From contig NC_088799.1 of assembly GCF_011386835.1 (NCBI RefSeq), positions 65,782,001 to 65,846,000 of the forward strand: a DNA stretch of 64,000 nt, in the 5' to 3' direction. The stretch's first letter is position 1. Every line of letters starts with the position of its first letter. Position numbers and translations under genes: made by a program. This document shows positions 32,457 to 57,429 of this stretch, piece after piece. Under the pieces are notes generated by a model, which saw only the letters and a list, made by a program, of their open reading frames with translations, was not told the origin of the DNA and did not search any database. Source of the stretch: Chrysemys picta bellii (Eukaryota).

Positions 32457-37350
<4,894 letters not shown>

Positions 37351-37929
37351 CACAGCCCCCTGCATAAGGAAGGAAGAACACTGAGATTCACAGAGAGAAG
37401 ATGGTTGGGCATGTCCACCACACAAACCTAAGGAAAGCTCCAATTGCAGGGTGTTCTCCTGGAACATGAAAGATTGCTGTACATGAAATAAATACTTTAT
37501 AGGGCAGCTTGTGGGGAGCAGGATAGGGTAAGGCTGTTGTATGGGGGGTTGCAAGATCATCTTTTTCCTTGCTTTCAGAGCTGGGCAGCCATAGAATGGT
37601 GGCTGCTGGCCAGGTGCCCAGCTCTGAAGGCAGCACCGCCACCAGCAGCAGTGCAAAAGTAAGAATGGCATGGTGTGGTTACTTAGCTCTGTAGGTATGT
37701 GTACTGGTGCCACAGATGCTATGTTCAGTAGCAGAGGGTGGTGGTGGGGGGAGTCAGTGTCATCACAGTCTGAAATATTTTTAAAAGAAATTTGAGAACC
37801 TCTGTCCTAATGGACATCTACATTGGGGGGGGGGGGGGGGAGAAGGGGGACTTTGCTCCTGAGAAGACAGTGTACCTGCAGTGTCTCAGTAATAATCATA
37901 AACCAGGGCACGACCTAAGACCCCTCAGG

Positions 37930-47000: not shown

Positions 47001-48290
47001 ACATTCCAGCCAGTCATCCATGGATGACCTGAGACTGATGCAGAGCAAACCATGGAACTGTGCTGAAGAAGATAAGGGTCCTGCAATCCATGCTATGTTC
47101 CCTTTACTTTGCTGCCTGTCAAATTGCAACTGCAGATTTGTTCTCTTTACATAAATGGCCACTATTGAGACAGCAGTTATGTTCTTGCTTGTGTCTTTCT
47201 TCCAGACCCGTCTCCAGGCTGTGCTGGATGAATTCAAACAGCAGGAAGACCGAGAGAAGCAGCAGGTGAGGAAGCCTCTGTTACTGTCTCCTCTATGTTC
47301 CTGTAGAAGAAAGCAACGAGTGTGCAGTGTTGTGGGGTGATGCTGAGTGATTCTCAGCATTAGGAAGCAACACGTTGCACGCCTGTTCAGTAGTTTAATG
47401 TATAAAGGCCTCTGAGCCCTGCACCACACCACCTCAGGCTGTGATCAACAGCTGCCACAAGCTAAGCAGGGCTGTACCTGATCAGTACCCCCGTGGTAGA
47501 ATGCCTACAAGCAGTGGAGCTGCTGGAAATGGTGATACAGTAGGTGTAGTCTTCTCTCCGGAACACTAGTTAGCCAAGTCACGTTGTTCCAGAGGGTGCT
47601 CTGAAGCTGAGGTTGCCATATTTAGAGTGAGATGTAAAATGAAGACCCTGACGACGTGTGTCCATTAAAGATACAGTAGCACTTTCTGAAGAGTAGGGGT
47701 AGCTCTGGTCACTTGGCAAATTACCAAGCTGGGTAACTATATTCTGCTGCTTTACATCTCTCCTTGCAGTTTCAGTTGAATACTATAGTTTTTCCCCCCA
47801 CACTTACTGGCTTGCGTAATGTTGTTTGCTGTAGACAGCTGCAGCATTCCACCCAAGAAGTGGCTGCATTTCAGTTGCAAACAAACCAGTTTTTACATCT
47901 GAGCCTGATTTTTAAAAACATGCTCAGAATATGTGCACACAGCTACTCCAGTTGTGTAAGCAAATCAGATGTTTGTGCATGTAACTGGTTATTTAACATG
48001 CCATTTAGGGGCAGAATAAGACTCGTGCTCATTCTGCACCTCATTTAGGCATGGGTATTTCTGTTCAGGCAGTTACATGTAGGTGTCTTCATAGAGACCT
48101 ATAGTTTGTAAAAAGTTTTGGGGATCCCTTTGAAAAGAAAGAAGAGTATTATTACCCCTTTGGTATGAGAGAGAGATCTAAGAAGTTTTAAACATAAAAT
48201 ATCTCTAATGCTTTACTCCTTTCCCTTCCAACCTTCTCCCCATAGCTCACCTCTCTGCAAGAACAACTGGAATCCCTTATGGAGAAGTGA
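41063..48290 (+). CDS. TAF7: TFIID subunit 7 (intron-containing TAF7/TAF7L locus), 11 coding exons, 353 aa
   Basis: join(41063..41128,42081..42159,43039..43172,43586..43712,43989..44047,45248..45320,45815..45931,46376..46564,46707..46819,47206..47265,48246..48290) = 1062 nt. [81 protein letters not shown], acidic Ser stretch and C-terminal coiled coil. Position corresponds to mammalian TAF7L. Confidence 0.95.
45321..45814 (+). other. U12-type (minor spliceosome) GT-AG intron in TAF7
   Basis: 5' splice site GTATCCTTT at 45321; branch point TTCCTTGAC at 45786-45794; acceptor AG ends 45814; splicing restores the frame (C|GC = Arg). Confidence 0.85.
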
Positions 48291-48986
48291 GGAGGGCTTT
48301 TGATCAGGATGGGAGCTATACCCTCCAAGCAGGCATAGTGCTGAGATGGACGCTTCACCCATGGGTTCTGGAGCCATCCTCTGTGCTGAAGACCTGATGT
48401 TACTGGCATGACCTCACTGCCGATAAGCCTACTCCTGTTAATGTTGGCACTCTGTATTCTCCTGGACATTGTTTCTAGAGCTGCTGGCTGATGTTTCTTG
48501 TGCTGGACAGTGCAGCCCAAACCATTAACCTTTGAAGAAAGAAAGGCACTAACCTGCAGTTGGTTCTCTGAGAGCAGCAGAAACACATGGCTAGTGGGTT
48601 AGCTGCACTGCTGGGGGAGATCGTTCCTTGACTAGTTTGACCCATCTTTCTCTCAGTGGAAATCATTCATACCTTGGAACACTCCTTCAAAGGCACTTTG
48701 CTTCCCGACAGGCTAATCCACAGCACTGTCACTCTGGGTCACCTTAGCTCATGGTGCCAGAAAGCCGTGCTGAGCAAAGGGCAGGAATTAACCCCCCATG
48801 CACTGCGCAGGCCTGGAGGAGCAGAGCCAGGTCAGTGCATCACCTGGTTGTTGCTATCATCTGACCCTGCAAAGCAGCATTCCCTGAGTGGGGCATGTGC
48901 TTCCTTAACAGACTTTCTGACGGGTCTGCAGTGTTGGGAGTTTGTGCCCATGCTTGGGGAACATCTGCTTGAACAAAACTGGAATG

Positions 48987-48992
48987 AATAAA
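48987..48992 (+). terminator. Candidate polyadenylation signal of TAF7
   Basis: AATAAA about 700 nt after the stop, followed by a GT-rich tract (gtgtgtgtgttttc). Confidence 0.6.
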
Positions 48993-49296
48993 GTGTGTGT
49001 GTTTTCAACCCTGCTCTGTCCTGTAATGCTCATTTCCTCAGAGCGGTGCTGTGACTGGCACTGTCCCTTTGCCAGCTGGAGACTGATGGCAGCAGAGCTC
49101 CCTGGTGCTTGTAGATGTAAAAGTGGTGGGGTGCTGCAGCAGCTTTGCTTTCTCACTCAGCGAGCAAGCTAGATACAAATGGGACCCTCCCAAGGGAAAA
49201 CTGGGAAGCTGCTATTGTGCTGTCAGTGTGGGGGCGTTCTCTCCTCCCCCCCTCACCCCCCCACGGGGCAGAGCCCTTGTGAGTAGGGAGCTTTCT

Positions 49297-49350
49297 CTAA
49301 TCCCAGATAGATTAGGGAGGCCAATCCTAGATTAACCTGGTAGGGGATTG
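49297..49350. promoter_or_regulatory. Cluster of CRX/OTX2-type (K50 homeodomain) sites upstream of the AIPL-like gene
   Basis: CTAATCCC 49297-49304, AGATTAG ~49309-49315, AGATTAA 49329-49335, GGGATTG ~49344-49350; also TAAGCC at 49619-49624. Confidence 0.55.
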
Positions 49351-49788
49351 GAAAGGCAGTCCAGTCAGCAGTTGTCAGAACGCATCACGGGGTGTTGGGT
49401 GGGAGGTTCTTCCTTACCACAGGGGAGAGAAGAGTGAGGCGAAGACAGAGGGGTAAGAAAATATAACAGATAACAGGGCCACTCTGGCTCCTTAACGTGG
49501 TTACTGTACAGCACAGTTCTCTCTGCTCCTGAATGGGCAAACTCCACCTAGGGGAAGTCCAGGGAGAAAAGGCTTTAGGATGTAGTGCAGTCACAGCCTC
49601 ATTCAGGGTGGGCAGCCTTAAGCCAGATATGCAGTAGCTAAAGACTGTTAGATGAGCCACAGGAGGAAGAAAACTCATCCCAACAGACCGGAATCGAAGA
49701 AACACTCAGCTCCAGGAAGAGTGAGAACAACAGTGGGTGTGACCAGCAACCAAAGAGGTGAGGAGGGAGATCTGCCAACAGCTTCAAC

Positions 49789-52700
49789 ATGGATGAAATG
49801 TACCTGCTTAATGTGGAAGGAGTCAAGAAAAAGATTTTACATGGAGGCCGAGGGGAGCTGCCGCAATTCAAAGATGGGAGCAAGGTAACTACTCTCAGCA
49901 AGCATCTCAAACTGGCTAAGGAGGGATAGAGCAGGTCAGATGTTATCTCATACCCTTGAATGACAGCCTGTATTGGGCAACAGAGGGTCCTGTGGCACCT
50001 TTGAGACTAACAGAAGTACTGGGAGCATAAGCTTTCGTGGGTAAGAACCTCACTTCTTCAGATGCATCTGAAGAAGTGAGGTTCTTACCCACGAAAGCTT
50101 ATGCTCCCAGTACTTCTGTTAGTCTCAAAGGTGCCACAGGACCCTCTGTTGCTTTTTACAGATTCAGACTAACACGGCTACCCCTCTGATACTTGACAGC
50201 CTGTATTGGGTTCCCCAGCAGCTGTCTCCCAGGCTCTCGGGCTGTAGATGGTGACCCAGAGCCCTTATTACTGAAATCCTCTGCACATGTCTCCTTTAAA
50301 AGCACTTGTAGTCAGAAGTGACTCTAAAAATAAAAACAGCTGATTTCTTCTCTCATTGAGTCCAGATCAAATTAGCTGAGTTTACCAGGCGGCAGGTTTT
50401 TCTAACTGCAGGCATTGAGATTCCAGCTGTGCTCTGTTTGCCTCCTTCATCAACTGCACTAATAGGTTCTGCCACTGGAATCCAGTTGACAGCTTTGTAT
50501 GCTGTAATCCAGCTCAGGCTCCTGGAGCCACATTAGCACAGCAAACAGAAGGAACAAAGCTAAGGGATGCATGTAGGGAGCAGATAATGGGAGTGACAGG
50601 GTGCCCCTTGTTTGTGTAGATATAGCCACATTCTAAGCCTCTAGCAGTGGGACCTAATGTTTTTCTTTGTGGTTAGCTTGCAGTAACCCCTGCTATGAAG
50701 TGTGCATGCTATATTTGCAAGGCACTGCTGTGAGGAAGTTCACTCTACTGGAGCCCTGAGTTGGGTTAAAAAGAGGTATTGGCAGAGAGCAGCAGATGGT
50801 GGAGTGCCTCAAAGCCTGTCCCTTCACCCCATGAGAACAGCTGAGTGAACTAACACTAAGCTGGGGTCATGGTCACCCCTTCTCAGTGACCCAAGGGTGG
50901 GATTGAGCCAAGTTTCAGGGTGGAGAGGGGAGGGAGAGAAGGCTACTTACTACTCCAGTGACCTGATCCCAGACTGTCATGCCTGCAGCTGACCCACTCT
51001 GCACTGGTTTCTCTTTGGTGCAGCTCACATTCCACTTTCAGACGCTAAAAGACGACTTTGAGCGCACGGTGATAGATGACAGCCGACAGGCTGGCATCCC
51101 CATGGAGATCATCGTGGGGAAACTGTTCAAAATCGAGGTGTGGGAGACCTTGCTAACCTCCATGAGGATCGGAGAAGTGGCAGAGTTCTGGTGTGATGCT
51201 ATTGTGAGTGACAACCCCCATGGCTGGGAACACCTAGATTACACACACACACACATTGTGCATGATCAATGCGTTGACACCAAAACACACCGGTATCAAC
51301 ACTTACACGTGTGCACAGCCCACAGATACATTCTGGACAGGATCGCACTGGCATACACATCTGTACCTGTCTTATGCATGGTTCTGTGCACCCTGCTGCA
51401 TGTAACTGGGAGCTGGAGCACTGGGCTGCTTGGTCCAGCAGCATGTCTTCCCTCACCAAGTCCTTTTATTCCTGAGATTTGGTGGGTGCAGGTTCTAACT
51501 CTAGGACAGACTGAAAAGCCCCAGCTCAGGCTGCAGTTCAGCCCTCGAGGGAGAGGAGCCATTTATTTCTGCTGTGGCAGACGGCTGCTTTTACAGTATT
51601 CCTGGCCTGCTGTCTGAATACCTGACCCAGATTCCAGGCCCCAGCCCTTAAGCAGGGGGGTTTAACTCCACTTTCCCCCTGCTGAGAGCAGGTGCCTCCC
51701 ATCACCATCTCACCCCACCTGCTCTCACTGGCCCCCGGACTAGGGGGAATGTTTTGTACATGTGCTTGAGCCAAAGTGCCTTTCCCCCTCTCCTCCCCCC
51801 CAATGTTTCAGCACACAGGCATGTACGCGCTGGTCTCCAAGGGCATGAGGAGGATTGCAGAGGGCAAGGACCCCTTGGAGGGGCAGAAGCACCGCTGTGG
51901 GATGGGGAACATGTTCGACTACCACAGCACGGGTTATGTGGACCTGGATGAGCTGCAGAGGGCCCCCCAGCCTCTCATCTTCATCATGGAGCTTTTCAAA
52001 GTAAGGCCTGGGCCAGGGGAGGAAAGGCAAGTGGGGTGAGGGAGAGCAAAGTCGGGACAGACCACACGATGCTCAGCGTGGCACAGCCTGGGCTAGTAGC
52101 TCTTCTGGGGCAGGGGGAGCCCAGCTCTCCTGGGCGTGGTGTGAGGAGCATATGAGGCTAGCAGTGTGAAGGTCTGTTTCCCCCCCCACACACACACACC
52201 AGGTGGACGACCCCTCATCCTATAAACGGGACACATGGGCCATGAACAAAGAGGAGAAACTGTCGGCAGTGCCCGTATTGCACAGCGAGGGCAACCGGCT
52301 GGTCCTGCTCAAGAGGTACCAGGAAGCAGCGGCGAAGTATCAGGAAGCAGTCATCTGCCTGCGGAACGTCCAGGCCAAGGTGAGAGCCACCCCGCTGGAC
52401 ACTGTAAATGGGGAGGGGTGGGCTAGCGTAGCACTGCCGCCCAGGGTGATGGGTCAGCGCTCAGCTGGAGCAGGGACAGCCACCTCCTGCTCTGGCTTCT
52501 TGTGCCCAGCTCCACAGCATTGGTACGTCATGCCTAGCACCACTTCCCTACTCTGCGGAGCCCCTACCGTCTGCACAGGTCCTGCCTGCAGCATGCAGCA
52601 GTGAGCTGGCTGCACTGCCCCCCACCACCAGCTATAGAGCTTCGGGAGGTCCTCGGCAGCCAATACGATTCCTAAGACAATAACAGCCCAGTCTGCCGGT

Positions 52701-54960
52701 CGCTTTGCTCACACCGTGGCTCCCTGCGGCTGGGAGAACCTGTACTCCTAGGCCTTTGCGGTGACGTTTTCAGGGTACAAAGTCCTGCAAACTAAATCAA
52801 AACAAGTCACTGGGAAAGGCCAGGCAGGGCTTGCTGCAAACAGCCACTTCGACCTGTGGCCTCCAGCAAGGAGGGGAGCCAGAAAGCTCCGACAGCGGTT
52901 CTTGGAACGGCATACTCAGCCAGATGGCTGAAGGTCGTGCATGCACTGGGATGCTCCCAGCAAGCACACTCCATGCTGGCTGTTTTACTTCAACGGTAGC
53001 TACTGTCCTCCATTTACCCCAGTTTGCCTGCAAAGCCCCCGCGGGATGCACTATGTATTGTTCCTGGCTACTGGCACTCTGTCCCTTTGCGAGTTCTCTG
53101 CCCAGCCAGAGGGGTCTGGTGTCTTCACGCTGCACGTTGCTGGTTTTGTGAACAGGAGAAGCCCTGGGCTGAAGACTGGCTGAGCCTGGAGAAACTCATC
53201 ACGCCCCTTGTGCTGAATTACTGCCAGTGCCAGCTGGAGCTGGGGGAATACTATGAGGTCTTAGAGCACACCACCGACCTCCTCCAGAAGAACAATGGTA
53301 ATCACCTCACCGGCCTGTCCCAACCTTCCACTCGGCTCCCAGAGAGGGGCTCTTGTTCTCATGGGACTCTGCATCCAGCGCTCCTGTCACGCAGGGGCTT
53401 CCTCTCTGCTACCGATCCCCTGGGAGTTTTTCAGCTGCTCCCTTCCTCCAGCACTTACAATCGTGTAGAGAAGGCATTTCAGGGGCGGGTCTCCTGGCTG
53501 GAGGAGTATTGCCTTCCATGGAATTTAAACCCAGCCGGAGCACAGCTTGAACTAGATCCATAGAAGGCTGAGTCAGTAATGGAAGCTGACATGCTAGTGC
53601 AGAGTGGCAGATACAGGAACAGCTGGTAGCCTTCACTCTGGCTGAGAGGTTGGGTTGGTCACTGGGTGTTTTCCTGTCTCTCAACTGCTGCTTTCCCCTT
53701 GTGACAGGTTTCAGAACTCTGTCCTGGAAAGGGAATATTGTCACACCAGGTGTAACAGCCTGTGGCACTCACTGCCACTAGATCCGCAGGCCCACAGCTT
53801 AGTAAGATTACAGAAGCCAGACTTGGATGATGAGAACATCTCCAGTTAGGATAAGAAACCTTCACGCTTCAGGCCATGAGCAAACTGGTGGTTGACAGGG
53901 GCTACTAAGAAACGTCGCAGGTCGGCAAGCTATGCTTTACTTGTCCCCTCTGAGCTTGCTTGCACCTTCCTGGGAAGCAGCTGTACTGGCCAGACACCGA
54001 TACAGGACTAGATGGGTGCTTGGCAGTTCCTACATTGGAATCCTGCTGCATGGCAGTGAATTAAATGGGAGCCAAGCTGTAGAGCAGTGTAGTGCTACAA
54101 CGCCCTGCTGCGATTGCCATAGGAGTGAGTGGAGCCTAGATCTTTGTTCTGATGCAGCCCCTTTGGGATACTCAGCACCTGCAGCAGGAGGCTCCAGGGA
54201 AAGGAGCTCAGAGGCCCTCTTCTGCAGGCAGGACAGGAGCGTGTGATGGCCAAGCAGGGCGAGAGAGGAAAGGAAATAACCCCATGCTTCTCTGCACTTG
54301 ACAGAGAACGTGAAGGCTTACTTCAAGCGCGCAAAGGCCCATGCTGCCGTCTGGAACGAGAAGGAGGCACGAGAAGACTTCCTGAGGGCGGCTCAACTGG
54401 ACCCGTCACTGGGAGCAGCTGTGAAGAAAGAGCTGAGGCTGTTGGGGGAGAGGATGAGAGAAAAACATGTGGAAGATAGGCAGAGATACCAGGGCCTCTT
54501 CCAGCAGCCTCAGCTCAAAGGGGCAACAGAAGGGAAGGGGCAGTTGGGAGGAGATGGGAATGCTGGAGCTGGCAGGCAGGAGGGAGGAAATTTTGGGGAA
54601 GGTAGGGAGGAGACAGGACTGGGAACAGAGAGCTCCACAGCCAAGGAGGAAGAACAAGACCAAGGAATTGCTAGAGCAGAGTGGGGTATGAGAGAGGCAG
54701 GACTTGGAGAAGAGAACACACATGCAAAGAAGGAACAAGGCCTGGGGGAGTCTGGGGCAGAGACAGGACCTGGGGAAGAGAGTGCCAGAGCAGAGAGGGA
54801 AGAGCCAGGGGAAGGAACAGACCAAGGGAATTCTGGGGTCGATGGAGCAGGGGGAGGACAAGGAAACTCGGAGACAGGCCGTGGAGAAGGATTTTCCAGA
54901 GCAGAGAGGGAACGAGCAAGCCAAGGTGATTGTGCGGCAGAAAGTCATAGGGACCACTAG
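49789..54960 (+). CDS. AIP/AIPL1-family co-chaperone (FKBP-like domain + TPR repeats) with long Gly/Glu-rich C-terminal tail, 6 exons, 479 aa
   Basis: join(49789..49884,51024..51203,51812..52000,52203..52379,53156..53297,54305..54960) = 1440 nt. Exon sizes 96/180/189/177/142 match AIPL1 as recalled. [80 protein letters not shown]. Confidence 0.93.
49978..50193. mobile_element. Penelope-like retroelement insertion with inverted duplication (perfect 176-bp palindrome)
   Basis: 17-bp direct repeat TGACAGCCTGTATTGGG at 49961-49977 and 50194-50210; palindrome 49977-50152; tail cagactaacacggctacccctctgatact is typical of reptile Penelope elements as recalled. Confidence 0.8.
50068..50106 (+). ncRNA. 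Hammerhead ribozyme-like core within the Penelope-like element (mirror copy on - strand at 50023-50061)
   Basis: CUGAAGA-A-[GUG(A)GGU UCUU ACCCAC]-GAA-A-GC UUAU GC-U-C: catalytic boxes, helix II and a short helix III with an NUH (CUC) site. Helix I is not evident. Confidence 0.5.
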
Positions 54961-55714
54961 AGAGAGGACTTGGAGAAGAGAATGCCAGGGAGAGTCATGG
55001 GGCAGGAGCCAGAGAAAGGAGCTCAGAGGCAGATAAAGAACGGGGAGGGGGAGCAGAAGGTTGCTCCAGCACTAAAGCAGCAGAGCAGAGCTTGGGGGAA
55101 GGGGTTGGGCCTGGGGCAGAGCCCAGCAGGACACTTTGAGATGAATGTTGAGAAATACAAGATGCTTCCTTGCTAACACACTGGAGGGAGGTCAGCACTG
55201 AGGGACAATGCTGCCGCTCACTAGGGCTGCCTAGTGAGGCAAAGAGAGATGGGCAAAGGGTCCCAGCCATTACCAGTGTAGTGCAGGACAGCAGAGAGCC
55301 CAGGGAGGGAAATTCAATACAGGGGGCCCAGGGCCAGGCTGAGATAGTGGGGGACTACCAGGTCCAGCTGGGCTGCTCTGTGAGTAGTTAGACTCTGGCC
55401 TGAACAAAGAGCTGTGGCTCAGTGAAAGGTAACTGGGTATTGGCTGGAGCTCTTTGCCATCTGTATGGTGCAGGCTTCCTCCCAAACCCTGTCACTGCTG
55501 AGCCACCAATGAAAGCGGGATCTGACCACATAACCTCACTCAAAAGTGCAGGAGCCAAGGCGGCCAACTTCATCTTCGTGAATCGGACTGACGCCTCATG
55601 CGCCTGCTCTCCCAGCCCGCCCTGTGCTCGGTGCTACAGCCCGCGCTCACCCTGTGCTGGGTCAGCAGTGCTAACCCCTGTACTGCTTCCTACTGCCGAG
55701 CTTGCTCACTGAGA

Positions 55715-55720
55715 AATAAA
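55715..55720 (+). terminator. Candidate polyadenylation signal of the AIPL-like gene
   Basis: AATAAA about 750 nt downstream of the stop codon. Confidence 0.5.
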
Positions 55721-56441
55721 GTGCATCCCTGGCAAGGCTCTGGCAGGATTCTTTCCTGGCTATGATTGGCATCTCCGAGCCAGCAGGCTCCCAGGCTGCC
55801 CCGGAGACCAAGGACACTCCTGGCCCCTGAAAAGCTTTGCTTTCCTTGCATGGATCTTCCCGTTTGTCCCAGCCTCCCAACCAGCCCCAGGAGGAGGTTA
55901 TTTATTAAACGCAGACAGCCCTACCTGAGCTCCCAGGAACAAGGCCGTCTGCCCCCAGAGCTCACTGTCTGAAAGCGGAGGCAGAGGGTGGAGCTTACTG
56001 TTTTCACTTTGTCTTTAGGGCAAAGTTGCGGGAGGGTGTATGGAGAGCAGCAGGCAAGAAGGGAGGAAATTGTCCCCATTTTACTGGTGTAATCCCCGGA
56101 ACCAGAGGCTGGATTCAGAATGGGAGGCGGGATGGGGAAGTTACTAGTGGCCATAGGCTTCTGATCTGCCCAGAGCTCAATCTGCATTGGAATTCAGCAC
56201 CAGGTCAGGACCCAGTTCACCTCCCCCTTTTCCATATGGGGGGAGGGGGCTCCCAAATGCTGTGACTGAACTGACCATGGGAGGAGGCTTGGGGAAGGGA
56301 ACAGGGGAGGCCCCTGTAGAAGAACAAGGCGGGCTCATGCTGTTCCACCATTAGTTGCAGAGACCACTGGCTTCTGCCCCATAAATTAAAAGGGGGAGAG
56401 GGATAGGCTGGGAGTTAGGACTCCTGGATTCTATTCCCAGC

Positions 56442-57429
56442 CAGGGCCGGATTAACCTTTTTGGGCCCCTATGGAGGCAATGAAGCATGGCACGGGGAAG
56501 TCAGTCCCTAGAGCAAGGGGCCAGCCGGAGGCAATGGGGCATGGTATGGCAGGGGCGGCCCCGCTCCGCCCAATGCAAGGGCACTATTTAGAAACCGGCA
56601 GTTGCCAGATGCACAGTGGCCTGCCCGGCCCTGTGCTGCCAGCATGCCCCTTCCCCTTGGGGGCAGGCCCCATGCCACACCACACAGCCCCTCCCCCCGC
56701 CCAACACCCCCCAACTCCCTATGACCAGAAGCCCCCCGGACCCACGCACAAATTCACAGCACCCTGCTCAACACCACCCCTGCCCACAGCCCCACCACAA
56801 CTGCCCAGCACCCCCACCCACAGAACCACCACTCCCTAGTGCCCCAACACACACAGATCCTCCCTGCCCCTTCGCAGCCCAGCACTCCCCTATACTCCCC
56901 ACAGACCCACTCCTCCAAGCCCTGCCTCCCGGCCATATCGGCCCTGCTGGGAGGCGACTGTGTCTGCCGGGCTGGTCCCAGGGCCGGGAATCACTCCAGT
57001 CCCTTGGGAGTGGTGCGATCAGCCAGGCCAGGACCTGCCCCGGCCAGGGTCCCTCAAGACACTTGCCTGGAGGGACCTAGCCAACCCTCTGCACTGTCTC
57101 CCCCACATACACACACACACCTGGCTGAGACTGGCCAGGCTTCTGCACCAGTCCCAGGCGACTCAGCTTCGGGGAGAAGGTGAAGCCCCACAGGTGGTAG
57201 GAAGCAGAGAGTGCCCAGAGCCAGAGGTGCACTGGGGTCCGGCCAGGGGTCAGAGAGGAGGTGGGGGGGGGGCGAGGAGCCAGCAGGCAGGCTGGCTGAG
57301 AGGAGCAAGTTGGGGGTGGGGGGAGACAGAGGGGTCTCAGGGCGCAGTGTAGGCGGAGCTGACCAGGACCCCTTCTGAGCATGGGCCCAGCTCCATGGAG
57401 CCACTGGAGCCATTGTAAACCCAGCACTG
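56442..57429. mobile_element. Degenerate non-autonomous hAT-like element inserted in a MIR-like SINE
   Basis: Ends CAGGGCCGGATTAAC / GTAAACCCAGCACTG (11 of 15); MIR-like sequence on both sides (ggactcctggattctattcccagc ... ccttgggcaagtcc); no intact TSD. Confidence 0.6.

What the first reader, a model, noticed from the sequence alone, without database searches (positions are those of the whole stretch)
49789..54960. Intact AIP/AIPL1-family paralogue at the BTK-TAF7 locus with mosaic AIP/AIPL1 features
Seen: a clean 6-exon, 479-aa FKBP+TPR gene about 800 bp after the TAF7 polyA signal. It has AIPL1-like features ([24 protein letters not shown], 96-nt first exon) and AIP-like features ([13 protein letters not shown], [17 protein letters not shown]). 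Known: human AIP and AIPL1 lie on chr11 and chr17, not beside BTK/TAF7L; AIPL1 is the HSP90 co-chaperone for photoreceptor PDE6; teleosts have a second aipl gene. Inference: this is an ancient third family member retained in reptiles and lost in mammals, possibly a cone- or pineal-specific PDE6 chaperone.
Basis: partly seen in the sequence, partly recalled or inferred. Interest (0 to 1): 0.72.

Follow-up and report, generated by a model that had tools for sequence, protein, structure and literature searches.

The report
Turtle AIPL2, a known AIPL1 paralogue
The gene is real and intact, but it is the already described AIPL2 (zebrafish aipl1b), an ancient sister of the photoreceptor chaperone AIPL1 that sits between TAF7 and DRP2 in most vertebrates and was lost in marsupials and placentals, so this is an ordinary, already annotated gene.

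Summary

An ML tree gives three clades: AIP, AIPL1 and AIPL2. The window gene lies in AIPL2 (100/99) with turtles, birds, squamates, platypus, axolotl, lungfish, coelacanth, gar and the teleost aipl2/aipl1b type. An AU test rejects orthology with AIPL1 (p = 0.011).

The order TAF7 -> gene <- DRP2 is the same in turkey and platypus, and TAF7 -> gene is the same in a Danio.

This has been published. Bhalla & van Noort (bioRxiv 2022, J Mol Evol 2023) describe AIPL-2 as a 2R ohnologue missing between BTK and DRP2 in therians and frog. Zebrafish aipl1b (the gosh mutant) is a cone and pineal Pde6c chaperone.

- No sauropsid appeared among 120 true AIPL1 hits, so AIPL2 is probably the turtle's only AIPL.
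- Platypus has both genes, and axolotl keeps AIPL2.
- The 479-aa length comes from a 16-bp deletion in the assembled individual. RNA-like contigs from other samples carry the 16 nt and encode 544 aa.
- A promoter block with CRX/OTX-type sites is conserved from turtle to turkey and partly to platypus.

Novelty: already known. Interest: low.

The parts
48987..48992 (+). AATAAA of the upstream gene (TAF7), 802 bp before the ATG
   Evidence: It is the only AATAAA/ATTAAA in 48000-49800. TAF7 collinearity with the turkey TAFII55_N gene ends at 48293.
49287..49360 (+). Conserved proximal promoter block with CRX/OTX-type sites (TAATCC at 49298, TAATCT on the minus strand at 49309 and 49329, GGATTG near 49346)
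   Evidence: Three TAATCY sites fall within 37 bp, against 56 in the whole 64 kb. The block aligns with turkey and partly with platypus upstream sequence, and similar site clusters lie upstream of the Danio gene.
49465..49788 (+). 5' UTR, contiguous with exon 1 (minimum extent)
   Evidence: RNA-like contigs reach 49496 (X5 record 24) and 49465 (X2 record 17) with no gap.
49789..49884 (+). Exon 1, ATG plus 32 codons
   Evidence: It is joined to exon 2 in contig X5 record 25.
49968..50161 (.). Intron 1 palindromic high-copy repeat (two 97-nt arms, 96% complementary). Not part of the gene's function.
   Evidence: Summed contig depth here is about a million, against about 20 elsewhere in the DNA run.
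51024..51203 (+). Exon 2, FKBP-like domain (F35, F37, I61, W72, W88, C89 in AIPL1 numbering)
51812..52000 (+). Exon 3, FKBP insert region and last strand
52203..52379 (+). Exon 4, linker and TPR1
53156..53297 (+). Exon 5, EKPW loop and TPR2
54305..54960 (+). Exon 6 coding part in the window allele: TPR3 with the K265-equivalent lysine, helix-7 extension, then a 151-aa Gly/Glu-rich tail and TAG
54948..54949 (+). Site of a 16-bp deletion in the assembled haplotype. AGCGTTCATGGCCAGA is present here in contigs of X1, X5 and X2.
   Evidence: table 4.
54951..55139 (+). Continuation of the ORF in the long (544-aa) allele, out of frame in the window, ending in TGA at 55137-55139
   Evidence: The tail is identical to the older Chrysemys model P0527.
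55715..55720 (+). AATAAA, the likely polyA signal of the gene
   Evidence: RNA-like contigs cover 55140-55349.

Best explanation
This is the painted-turtle orthologue of AIPL2, called aipl1b in zebrafish and 'AIPL-2' by Bhalla & van Noort. NCBI labels it 'AIPL1-like 1'. AIPL2 is the sister ohnologue of AIPL1.

Shown here: gene structure, clade, synteny, fold, conserved residues, and a spliced transcript.

Inferred by homology:
- The protein acts as an HSP90 co-chaperone. Its TPR domain with the helix-7 extension would dock on the HSP90 MEEVD end through the conserved clamp lysine.
- Its AIPL-type FKBP domain, with a prenyl pocket and no isomerase role, would hold nascent prenylated PDE6 catalytic subunits so that they mature and stay stable.
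- Expression would be driven in retinal and pineal photoreceptors by a conserved promoter with CRX/OTX-type sites.

A further inference is less certain. No AIPL1 is found in sauropsids, so in turtles AIPL2 probably serves both cone PDE6C and rod PDE6B rather than cones alone.

The 'mosaic' look arises because AIPL2 kept ancestral, AIP-like states in TPR3 and helix 7 while AIPL1 diverged there. The long acidic, Gly-rich tail is disordered. Its last 65 residues are missing in the reference allele because of a 16-bp deletion.
For: - Model: GT-AG at all introns and identity to RefSeq P0522.
- Tree: AIPL1 100/100, AIPL2 100/99, AIPL1+AIPL2 100/100, with the window gene among turtles. The AU test rejects sauropsid genes plus AIPL1 as one clade (p = 0.011, lnL difference 45).
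- Synteny: TAF7 -> gene <- DRP2 in turkey and platypus, and TAF7 -> gene in Danio aesculapii at about 43 Mb of a 57-Mb chromosome. This matches the zebrafish gosh/aipl1b map position on chr14. The window itself carries a Tyr kinase, a Tim10/DDP gene and TAF7 upstream.
- Fold: mean pLDDT 84.8. TM 0.73-0.81 to XAP2 in Hsp90 complexes, 0.86-0.88 to the AIPL1 FKBP domain, and 0.94-0.97 to the AIP/AIPL1 TPR domain.
- Sequence: 470 bits to AIPL1 (8eoa_C) against 419 bits to AIP.
- Residues: F37, I61, W72, W88, C89 and K265 are as in AIPL1, whereas AIP has Y37, L61 and no W88. The helix-7 extension is conserved. The roles of I61, I151, K265 and residues 317-328 are taken from PMC8857470.
- Transcript: an exon 1-exon 2 junction lies in one contig, and coverage is mostly exonic in two studies.
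- Promoter.
- Function of the orthologue: aipl1b is expressed in cones and pineal, and Pde6c is lost in the gosh mutant.
- Prior description of AIPL-2 between BTK and DRP2; review.
- No sauropsid among the 120 best true AIPL1 hits.
Against: - No tissue is known for the RNA-like runs. They are only guessed to be RNA and also hold some intronic pieces.
- No assay of HSP90, prenyl or PDE6 binding exists for any sauropsid AIPL2.
- The absence of AIPL1 in turtles rests on annotated-protein searches that list only 120 hits, and on the literature. The genome itself was not searched.
- At three pocket positions AIPL2 differs from mammalian AIPL1 (I69, M104, M151).
- The last 67 residues group weakly with AIP.
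Confidence: 0.88

Rival explanations
1. It is the true AIPL1 orthologue, moved in sauropsids from the canonical locus to the TAF7-DRP2 interval (simple translocation), as the NCBI name suggests.
For: NCBI and B10K name it AIPL1. No other AIPL1 was seen in sauropsids. The FKBP domain scores higher to AIPL1 than to AIP.
Against: It lies in a separate clade with fish aipl2, coelacanth, lungfish and platypus proteins, and these species also have a true AIPL1. The AU test gives p = 0.011 against this reading. The same TAF7-linked position is found in a Danio, turkey and platypus. Platypus AIPL1 sits elsewhere, next to an RCS1/PIMREG-type gene.
Confidence: 0.02
2. It is a cone- and pineal-specific PDE6C chaperone in turtles, as in zebrafish, and rods use some other factor.
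For: Zebrafish aipl1b is expressed in all cones and in the pineal, but not in rods. Turtle retinas are cone-rich (general knowledge).
Against: In zebrafish, rods use aipl1a, which is AIPL1. No AIPL1 was found in any sauropsid, yet sauropsid rods still need PDE6B to mature. Mammalian AIPL1 alone serves both cell types. Cell type was not measured here.
Confidence: 0.15
3. It works mainly as an AIP-like co-chaperone of the aryl hydrocarbon receptor rather than of PDE6.
For: TPR3 and helix 7 are closer to AIP than to AIPL1. A killifish study lists aipl2 among the 'aip isoforms' of AHR signalling.
Against: A separate AIP gene exists in turtles (P0100, P0105). The FKBP pocket is of the AIPL type, not the AIP type. 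The zebrafish orthologue is photoreceptor-restricted and has a PDE6C phenotype. The promoter carries CRX/OTX-type sites.
Confidence: 0.04
4. It is a chimera produced by gene conversion between AIP and AIPL1.
For: Motifs of AIPL1 type and AIP type occur in one protein.
Against: All three groups are monophyletic in the FKBP, TPR and TPR3 partitions. AIPL1+AIPL2 is recovered for the FKBP part (99) and the whole TPR part (94). The AIP-like signal is confined to 67 columns, with a 0.06 stem, where AIPL1 has a 0.48 stem. The pattern is shared by every AIPL2 from fish to turtle.
Confidence: 0.01

Closest known systems
AIPL2 / zebrafish Aipl1b (gosh), 'AIPL-2' of Bhalla & van Noort
   Same: Same clade. 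Same position directly downstream of TAF7. Same FKBP+TPR core followed by a long, non-proline-rich C-terminal tail. The core is 65.5% identical to the Danio protein and 86% to chicken.
   Different: In teleosts it coexists with aipl1a. In turtles it appears to be the only AIPL. The tail sequence is not conserved between lineages. The reference turtle allele lacks the last 65 residues.
AIPL1 (human 17p13, LCA4 gene; HSP90 co-chaperone of PDE6)
   Same: Same six-exon FKBP+TPR architecture. Same AIPL-type pocket residues (F37, I61, W72, W88, C89), clamp lysine and helix-7 extension. 58-63% identity over 328 residues.
   Different: It is a separate ohnologue at another locus. TPR3 and helix 7 keep AIP-like states. 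The tail is Gly/Glu-rich rather than the primate proline-rich domain, or no tail at all.
AIP / XAP2 (HSP90 co-chaperone of AHR)
   Same: Same overall fold: TM 0.73-0.81 to 7zub_C and 8h77_F. 53-55% identity. Near-identical [17 protein letters not shown] motif.
   Different: It is a different clade. AIP has Y37, L61 and no W88, and is reported not to bind prenyl lipids. Turtles have their own AIP gene.

Membership tests
AIPL2 (aipl1b / AIPL-2 ohnologue) | Falls in the AIPL2 clade, separate from AIPL1 and AIP | tested here: met
   ML tree of 57 proteins gives AIPL2 support of 100/99. The AU test rejects grouping with AIPL1, p = 0.011.
AIPL2 (aipl1b / AIPL-2 ohnologue) | Lies between TAF7(L) and DRP2, beside BTK and TIMM8A | tested here: met
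   The window carries a Tyr kinase, a Tim10/DDP gene and TAF7 upstream. Turkey, platypus and Danio orthologues have the same neighbours. DRP2 itself is only weakly touched at the window's end.
AIPL2 (aipl1b / AIPL-2 ohnologue) | Long low-complexity C-terminal tail after TPR helix 7 | tested here: met
   The tail is 151 aa (216 aa in the long allele), 24% Gly and 22% acidic. Listed orthologues that NCBI gives as full-length predictions run from about 425 to about 850 aa.
AIPL2 (aipl1b / AIPL-2 ohnologue) | Expression in retinal and pineal photoreceptors | tested here: inconclusive
   Spliced RNA-like contigs exist, but their tissue is unknown. A conserved promoter block with CRX/OTX-type sites is present.
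AIPL2 (aipl1b / AIPL-2 ohnologue) | Needed for PDE6C stability | not testable with these tools
   Known only from the zebrafish gosh mutant.
AIPL1 orthologue group | Nests within the AIPL1 clade | tested here: not met
AIPL1 orthologue group | Canonical locus next to PIMREG (RCS1 domain) | tested here: not met
   The window locus is TAF7-linked. Platypus AIPL1 (P0420) lies next to an RCS1 gene on another chromosome.
AIP/AIPL FKBP-TPR HSP90 co-chaperones | N-terminal PPIase_AIP FKBP-like domain with insert region | tested here: met
   Pfam PF23322, 70.6 bits. The model has low confidence only in the 117-129 loop of the insert. TMt is 0.86-0.88 to the AIPL1 FKBP domain.
AIP/AIPL FKBP-TPR HSP90 co-chaperones | Three TPRs, a helix-7 extension, and the clamp lysine that contacts MEEVD | tested here: met
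   Helices 171-327 in the model. TMt is 0.94-0.97 to AIP/AIPL1 TPR structures. The K265 equivalent and the helix-7 extension are conserved. HSP90 binding itself was not tested.
AIPL-type (prenyl-binding) FKBP pocket | AIPL1-type pocket residues as opposed to AIP-type | tested here: met
   F37, I61, W72, W88 and C89 are as in AIPL1, whereas AIP has Y37, L61 and L/R/A/T88. Lipid binding was not tested. Positions 69, 104 and 151 differ conservatively.
AIP (XAP2) orthologue group | Nests within the AIP clade | tested here: not met
   Turtle AIP is a separate protein (P0105).

The most novel reading that the evidence does not exclude
In sauropsids AIPL2 is the only AIPL chaperone and has taken over rod PDE6 maturation. 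The sauropsid stem lost both AIPL1 and PDE6A (PMC4906994). This suggests that AIPL1 is tied specifically to the PDE6A-containing rod heterodimer, while AIPL2 suffices for the PDE6C and PDE6B homodimers. No paper found here links the two losses.
Probability: 0.3. Interest if true: 0.5.

Novelty: already known. Interest (0 to 1): 0.17.

Why it matters
There is little new here. The gene is in RefSeq. The AIPL-2 ohnologue and its loss between BTK and DRP2 in therians are published, and its function is known from the zebrafish gosh mutant.

The practical value is a naming point. What databases call 'AIPL1' in birds and reptiles is AIPL2, so chicken and turtle 'AIPL1' data should not be read as data on the LCA4 gene's orthologue.

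The small additions could seed a study of how one chaperone serves rod and cone PDE6. They are that platypus has both genes, that axolotl keeps AIPL2, that a natural tail-truncating allele exists, and that AIPL1 and PDE6A were both lost in sauropsids.

Tried and rejected
- The search of earlier findings by place and by words returned nothing.
- The journal version of Bhalla & van Noort is not held, so the preprint was read instead. A malformed term cost one call.
- The review PMC12733016 cites the AIPL-1/AIPL-2 phylogeny under a reference number that points to a gene-therapy trial. The real source is evidently its reference 15.
- Tandem Repeats Finder found no array in the tail-coding DNA, so the 16-bp indel is not explained by a clean repeat.
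- The contig look-up for the odd 'panda' protein P0167 found nothing on record.
- The joints table of read laying was swamped by the intron-1 repeat, so splice evidence comes from the pieces table only.
- Gene conversion and translocation were considered and rejected.
- Searches used single exons by reference or database proteins. The joined model was built only inside local scripts, to check the frame, for alignments and for the tree. From then on, the identical database protein P0522 replaced it wherever a full-length protein was handed to a tool or used in new alignments and trees; rebuilt the tree with the script-built model.
Full report
**1. The observation**

The sequence at 49789-54960 holds six + strand exons: 49789-49884, 51024-51203, 51812-52000, 52203-52379, 53156-53297 and 54305-54960. 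Each has an AG acceptor and a GT donor. Together they make 1440 nt, which is 479 codons and a TAG.

Searched exon by exon, Pfam finds PPIase_AIP/FKBP_C in exons 2-3 and TPR in exons 4 and 6. Against the PDB, exons 2 and 3 score higher to AIPL1 than to AIP.

The only AATAAA upstream lies at 48987, 802 bp before the ATG and after the last TAF7 homology.

The window also holds a Tyr-kinase exon (about 22 kb), a Tim10/DDP exon (about 27.4 kb) and a NIPA-family gene on the minus strand (32.4-37.7 kb). TAF7 exons are collinear with the turkey TAFII55_N gene.

[quoted passage not shown] The gene is thus already annotated, and the window is most likely painted-turtle sequence.

**2. What it is**

A word search with the conserved part of exon 6 returned turtle, bird and squamate proteins called 'AIPL1'. 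[quoted passage not shown]

A search with the FKBP domain of the Pelusios orthologue added platypus, axolotl, lungfish, gar, bichir and many teleost 'aipl2' proteins, all at 73% identity or more.

True AIPL1 proteins were reached through the representative search and the cluster names. They were then listed with a frog AIPL1 FKBP domain as the query.

An ML tree of 57 proteins over 329 columns, rooted on invertebrate AIP-like proteins, gives three groups. These are AIP, AIPL1 (100/100) and AIPL2 (100/99), with AIPL1+AIPL2 at 100/100. The window gene sits among turtles, and the AIPL2 subtree follows the species tree. Forcing the sauropsid genes into one clade with AIPL1 costs 45 log-likelihood units and is rejected (p-AU 0.011).

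Identity of the 328-residue core:

| Compared with | Identity |
|---|---|
| Chicken AIPL2 | 86% |
| Platypus AIPL2 | 76.5% |
| Danio AIPL2 | 65.5% |
| AIPL1 proteins | 58-63% |
| AIP proteins | 53-55% |

**3. Synteny**

The turkey and platypus orthologues lie between a TAFII55_N gene on the same strand and a Spectrin/WW/EF-hand/ZZ gene (DRP2 type) on the opposite strand.

The Danio aesculapii orthologue lies directly after a TAFII55_N gene at about 43 Mb. This matches the 41.7-42.9 Mb interval of zebrafish chr14 to which gosh/aipl1b was mapped.

Platypus also has a true AIPL1 on another chromosome, next to an RCS1 (PIMREG-type) gene. The locus is therefore ancestral and not the result of a translocation.

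**4. Literature**

Bhalla & van Noort (bioRxiv 10.1101/2022.07.13.499904; J Mol Evol 2023) describe AIPL-1 and AIPL-2 as 2R ohnologues. They place bird, reptile and platypus homologues in AIPL-2. [quoted passage not shown] A 2025 review repeats this.

Iribarne et al. 2017 (PMC5381001) show that zebrafish aipl1b is expressed in all cones and in pineal photoreceptors. They also show that its loss removes Pde6c and Gc3.

**5. Mechanism**

An AlphaFold model of residues 1-335 has a mean pLDDT of 84.8. It matches XAP2 in Hsp90 complexes over its full length (TM 0.73-0.81). It also matches the AIPL1 FKBP domain (TMt 0.86-0.88) and AIP/AIPL1 TPR domains (TMt 0.94-0.97).

At positions where AIPL1 and AIP differ in the FKBP pocket, the turtle protein has the AIPL1 state (F37, I61, W88). 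W72 and C89 are conserved throughout. The K265 equivalent and the helix-7 extension are present. In mouse AIPL1, K265 and residues 317-328 are needed for HSP90 binding and PDE6C maturation, and I61 and I151 line the prenyl site (PMC8857470).

The most likely mechanism is therefore that of AIPL1. The TPR domain docks on HSP90 and the FKBP pocket holds the prenylated PDE6 C-terminus. This is inferred from homology and was not assayed.

**6. The 'mosaic' appearance**

Separate trees for the FKBP part and for the whole TPR part both recover AIPL1+AIPL2 (SH-aLRT 99 and 94). Only the last 67 columns group AIPL2 with AIP. That grouping has a stem of 0.06, while the AIPL1 stem there is 0.48.

So AIPL2 kept ancestral states in that stretch and AIPL1 diverged. 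Nothing points to a chimera.

**7. Is there another AIPL in turtles?**

The 120 best hits to frog AIPL1 run from 100% down to 71% identity. They include frogs, a caecilian, sharks, rays, a chimaera, coelacanth, lungfish, platypus, marsupials, placentals and many ray-finned fishes. They include no bird, turtle, squamate or crocodilian.

This agrees with the preprint. It makes AIPL2 the probable sole AIPL of sauropsids, and therefore unlikely to be cone-only there. This step rests on annotated proteins and on a capped list. The genome itself was not searched.

Sauropsids also lack PDE6A (PMC4906994). The coincidence of the two losses is noted as a hypothesis only.

**8. Transcript and promoter**

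Runs guessed to be RNA hold 14-23% of the sampled words of the stretch.

When laid on the window, contigs from two studies of the same species and from one related species lie mostly on exons and UTRs, with a few intronic pieces. One contig (X5 record 25) joins 49800-49882 to 51022-51203, which is the exon 1-exon 2 junction. The 5' UTR reaches at least 49465. The tissue of these runs is unknown.

Just upstream, 49287-49360 holds three TAATCY sites within 37 bp, against 56 in the whole 64 kb. This block aligns with the turkey upstream region and partly with the platypus one. Clusters of the same sites lie upstream of the Danio gene. This fits a CRX/OTX-driven photoreceptor promoter, but binding was not tested.

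**9. The 479-aa length**

Related emydids (Malaclemys, Terrapene, Trachemys, Emys) and sea turtles continue past the window's stop in another frame.

Contigs of X1 and X5 (same species, two studies) and of X2 (a related species) carry AGCGTTCATGGCCAGA after 54948. The contig of the DNA run that matches the window exactly (X15, probably the source animal) does not.

With the 16 nt restored, the ORF is 544 aa and ends at 55139. Its tail is then identical to an older UniProt model of the same species.

The reference haplotype therefore carries a frameshifting deletion in the last exon. It replaces the final 68 residues of the disordered tail with three residues. The folded core is untouched.

**10. 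Verdict**

The gene is real, intact and expressed. It is a member of the known AIPL2 group, and it is already annotated and described. Interest is low.

It was used only in local scripts until the identical database protein P0522 was found.

Noticed in passing
window 32457-37713 (minus strand): A NIPA-family magnesium-transporter gene (Pfam Mg_trans_NIPA, E = 6e-55) lies between the TIMM8A-like and TAF7 genes. From memory, human NIPAL1 and NIPAL4 lie near TEC/TXK and ITK, so this may be another paralogon member missing from the therian X..
   Followed up: no
window 49968-50161: A perfect-hairpin repeat sits in intron 1 (97-nt arms, 96% complementary, no spacer). Summed contig depth is enormous in every run, so it is a very high-copy element of this genome..
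   Followed up: partly
L002 and L004 (platypus): Platypus has both AIPL2 (P0170, between TAF7 and DRP2) and a true AIPL1 (P0420, next to an RCS1/PIMREG-type gene). The preprint and the review say platypus homologues occur only in AIPL-2..
   Followed up: yes
P0171 (Ambystoma mexicanum): Axolotl has an AIPL2-clade protein (78% identical to the turtle core). 'Amphibians lost AIPL-2' therefore holds for frogs but not for salamanders. No salamander appeared in the AIPL1 list. Synteny was not checked..
   Followed up: partly
P0167 (UniProt A0A7N5JWL6, labelled Ailuropoda melanoleuca): A 'giant panda' protein groups as sister to a snake AIPL2 (100/98). It is most likely contamination or a mislabel, not a eutherian AIPL2. 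No contig is on record for it..
   Followed up: partly
protein lists: No crocodilian protein appeared in either the AIPL2 or the AIPL1 list. This may be an effect of clustering, length limits or annotation.
   Followed up: no
window 55869-55925 and 56842-56961: Ensembl-type models of other turtles (Chelydra P0002, Chelonoidis P0004) end in short exons that match these places downstream of the stop. No read support was examined there..
   Followed up: no
P0070, P0111: A catshark protein and a hagfish protein fall in the AIP clade (the hagfish on a long branch). The preprint states that cartilaginous fish are absent from the AIP clade..
   Followed up: partly
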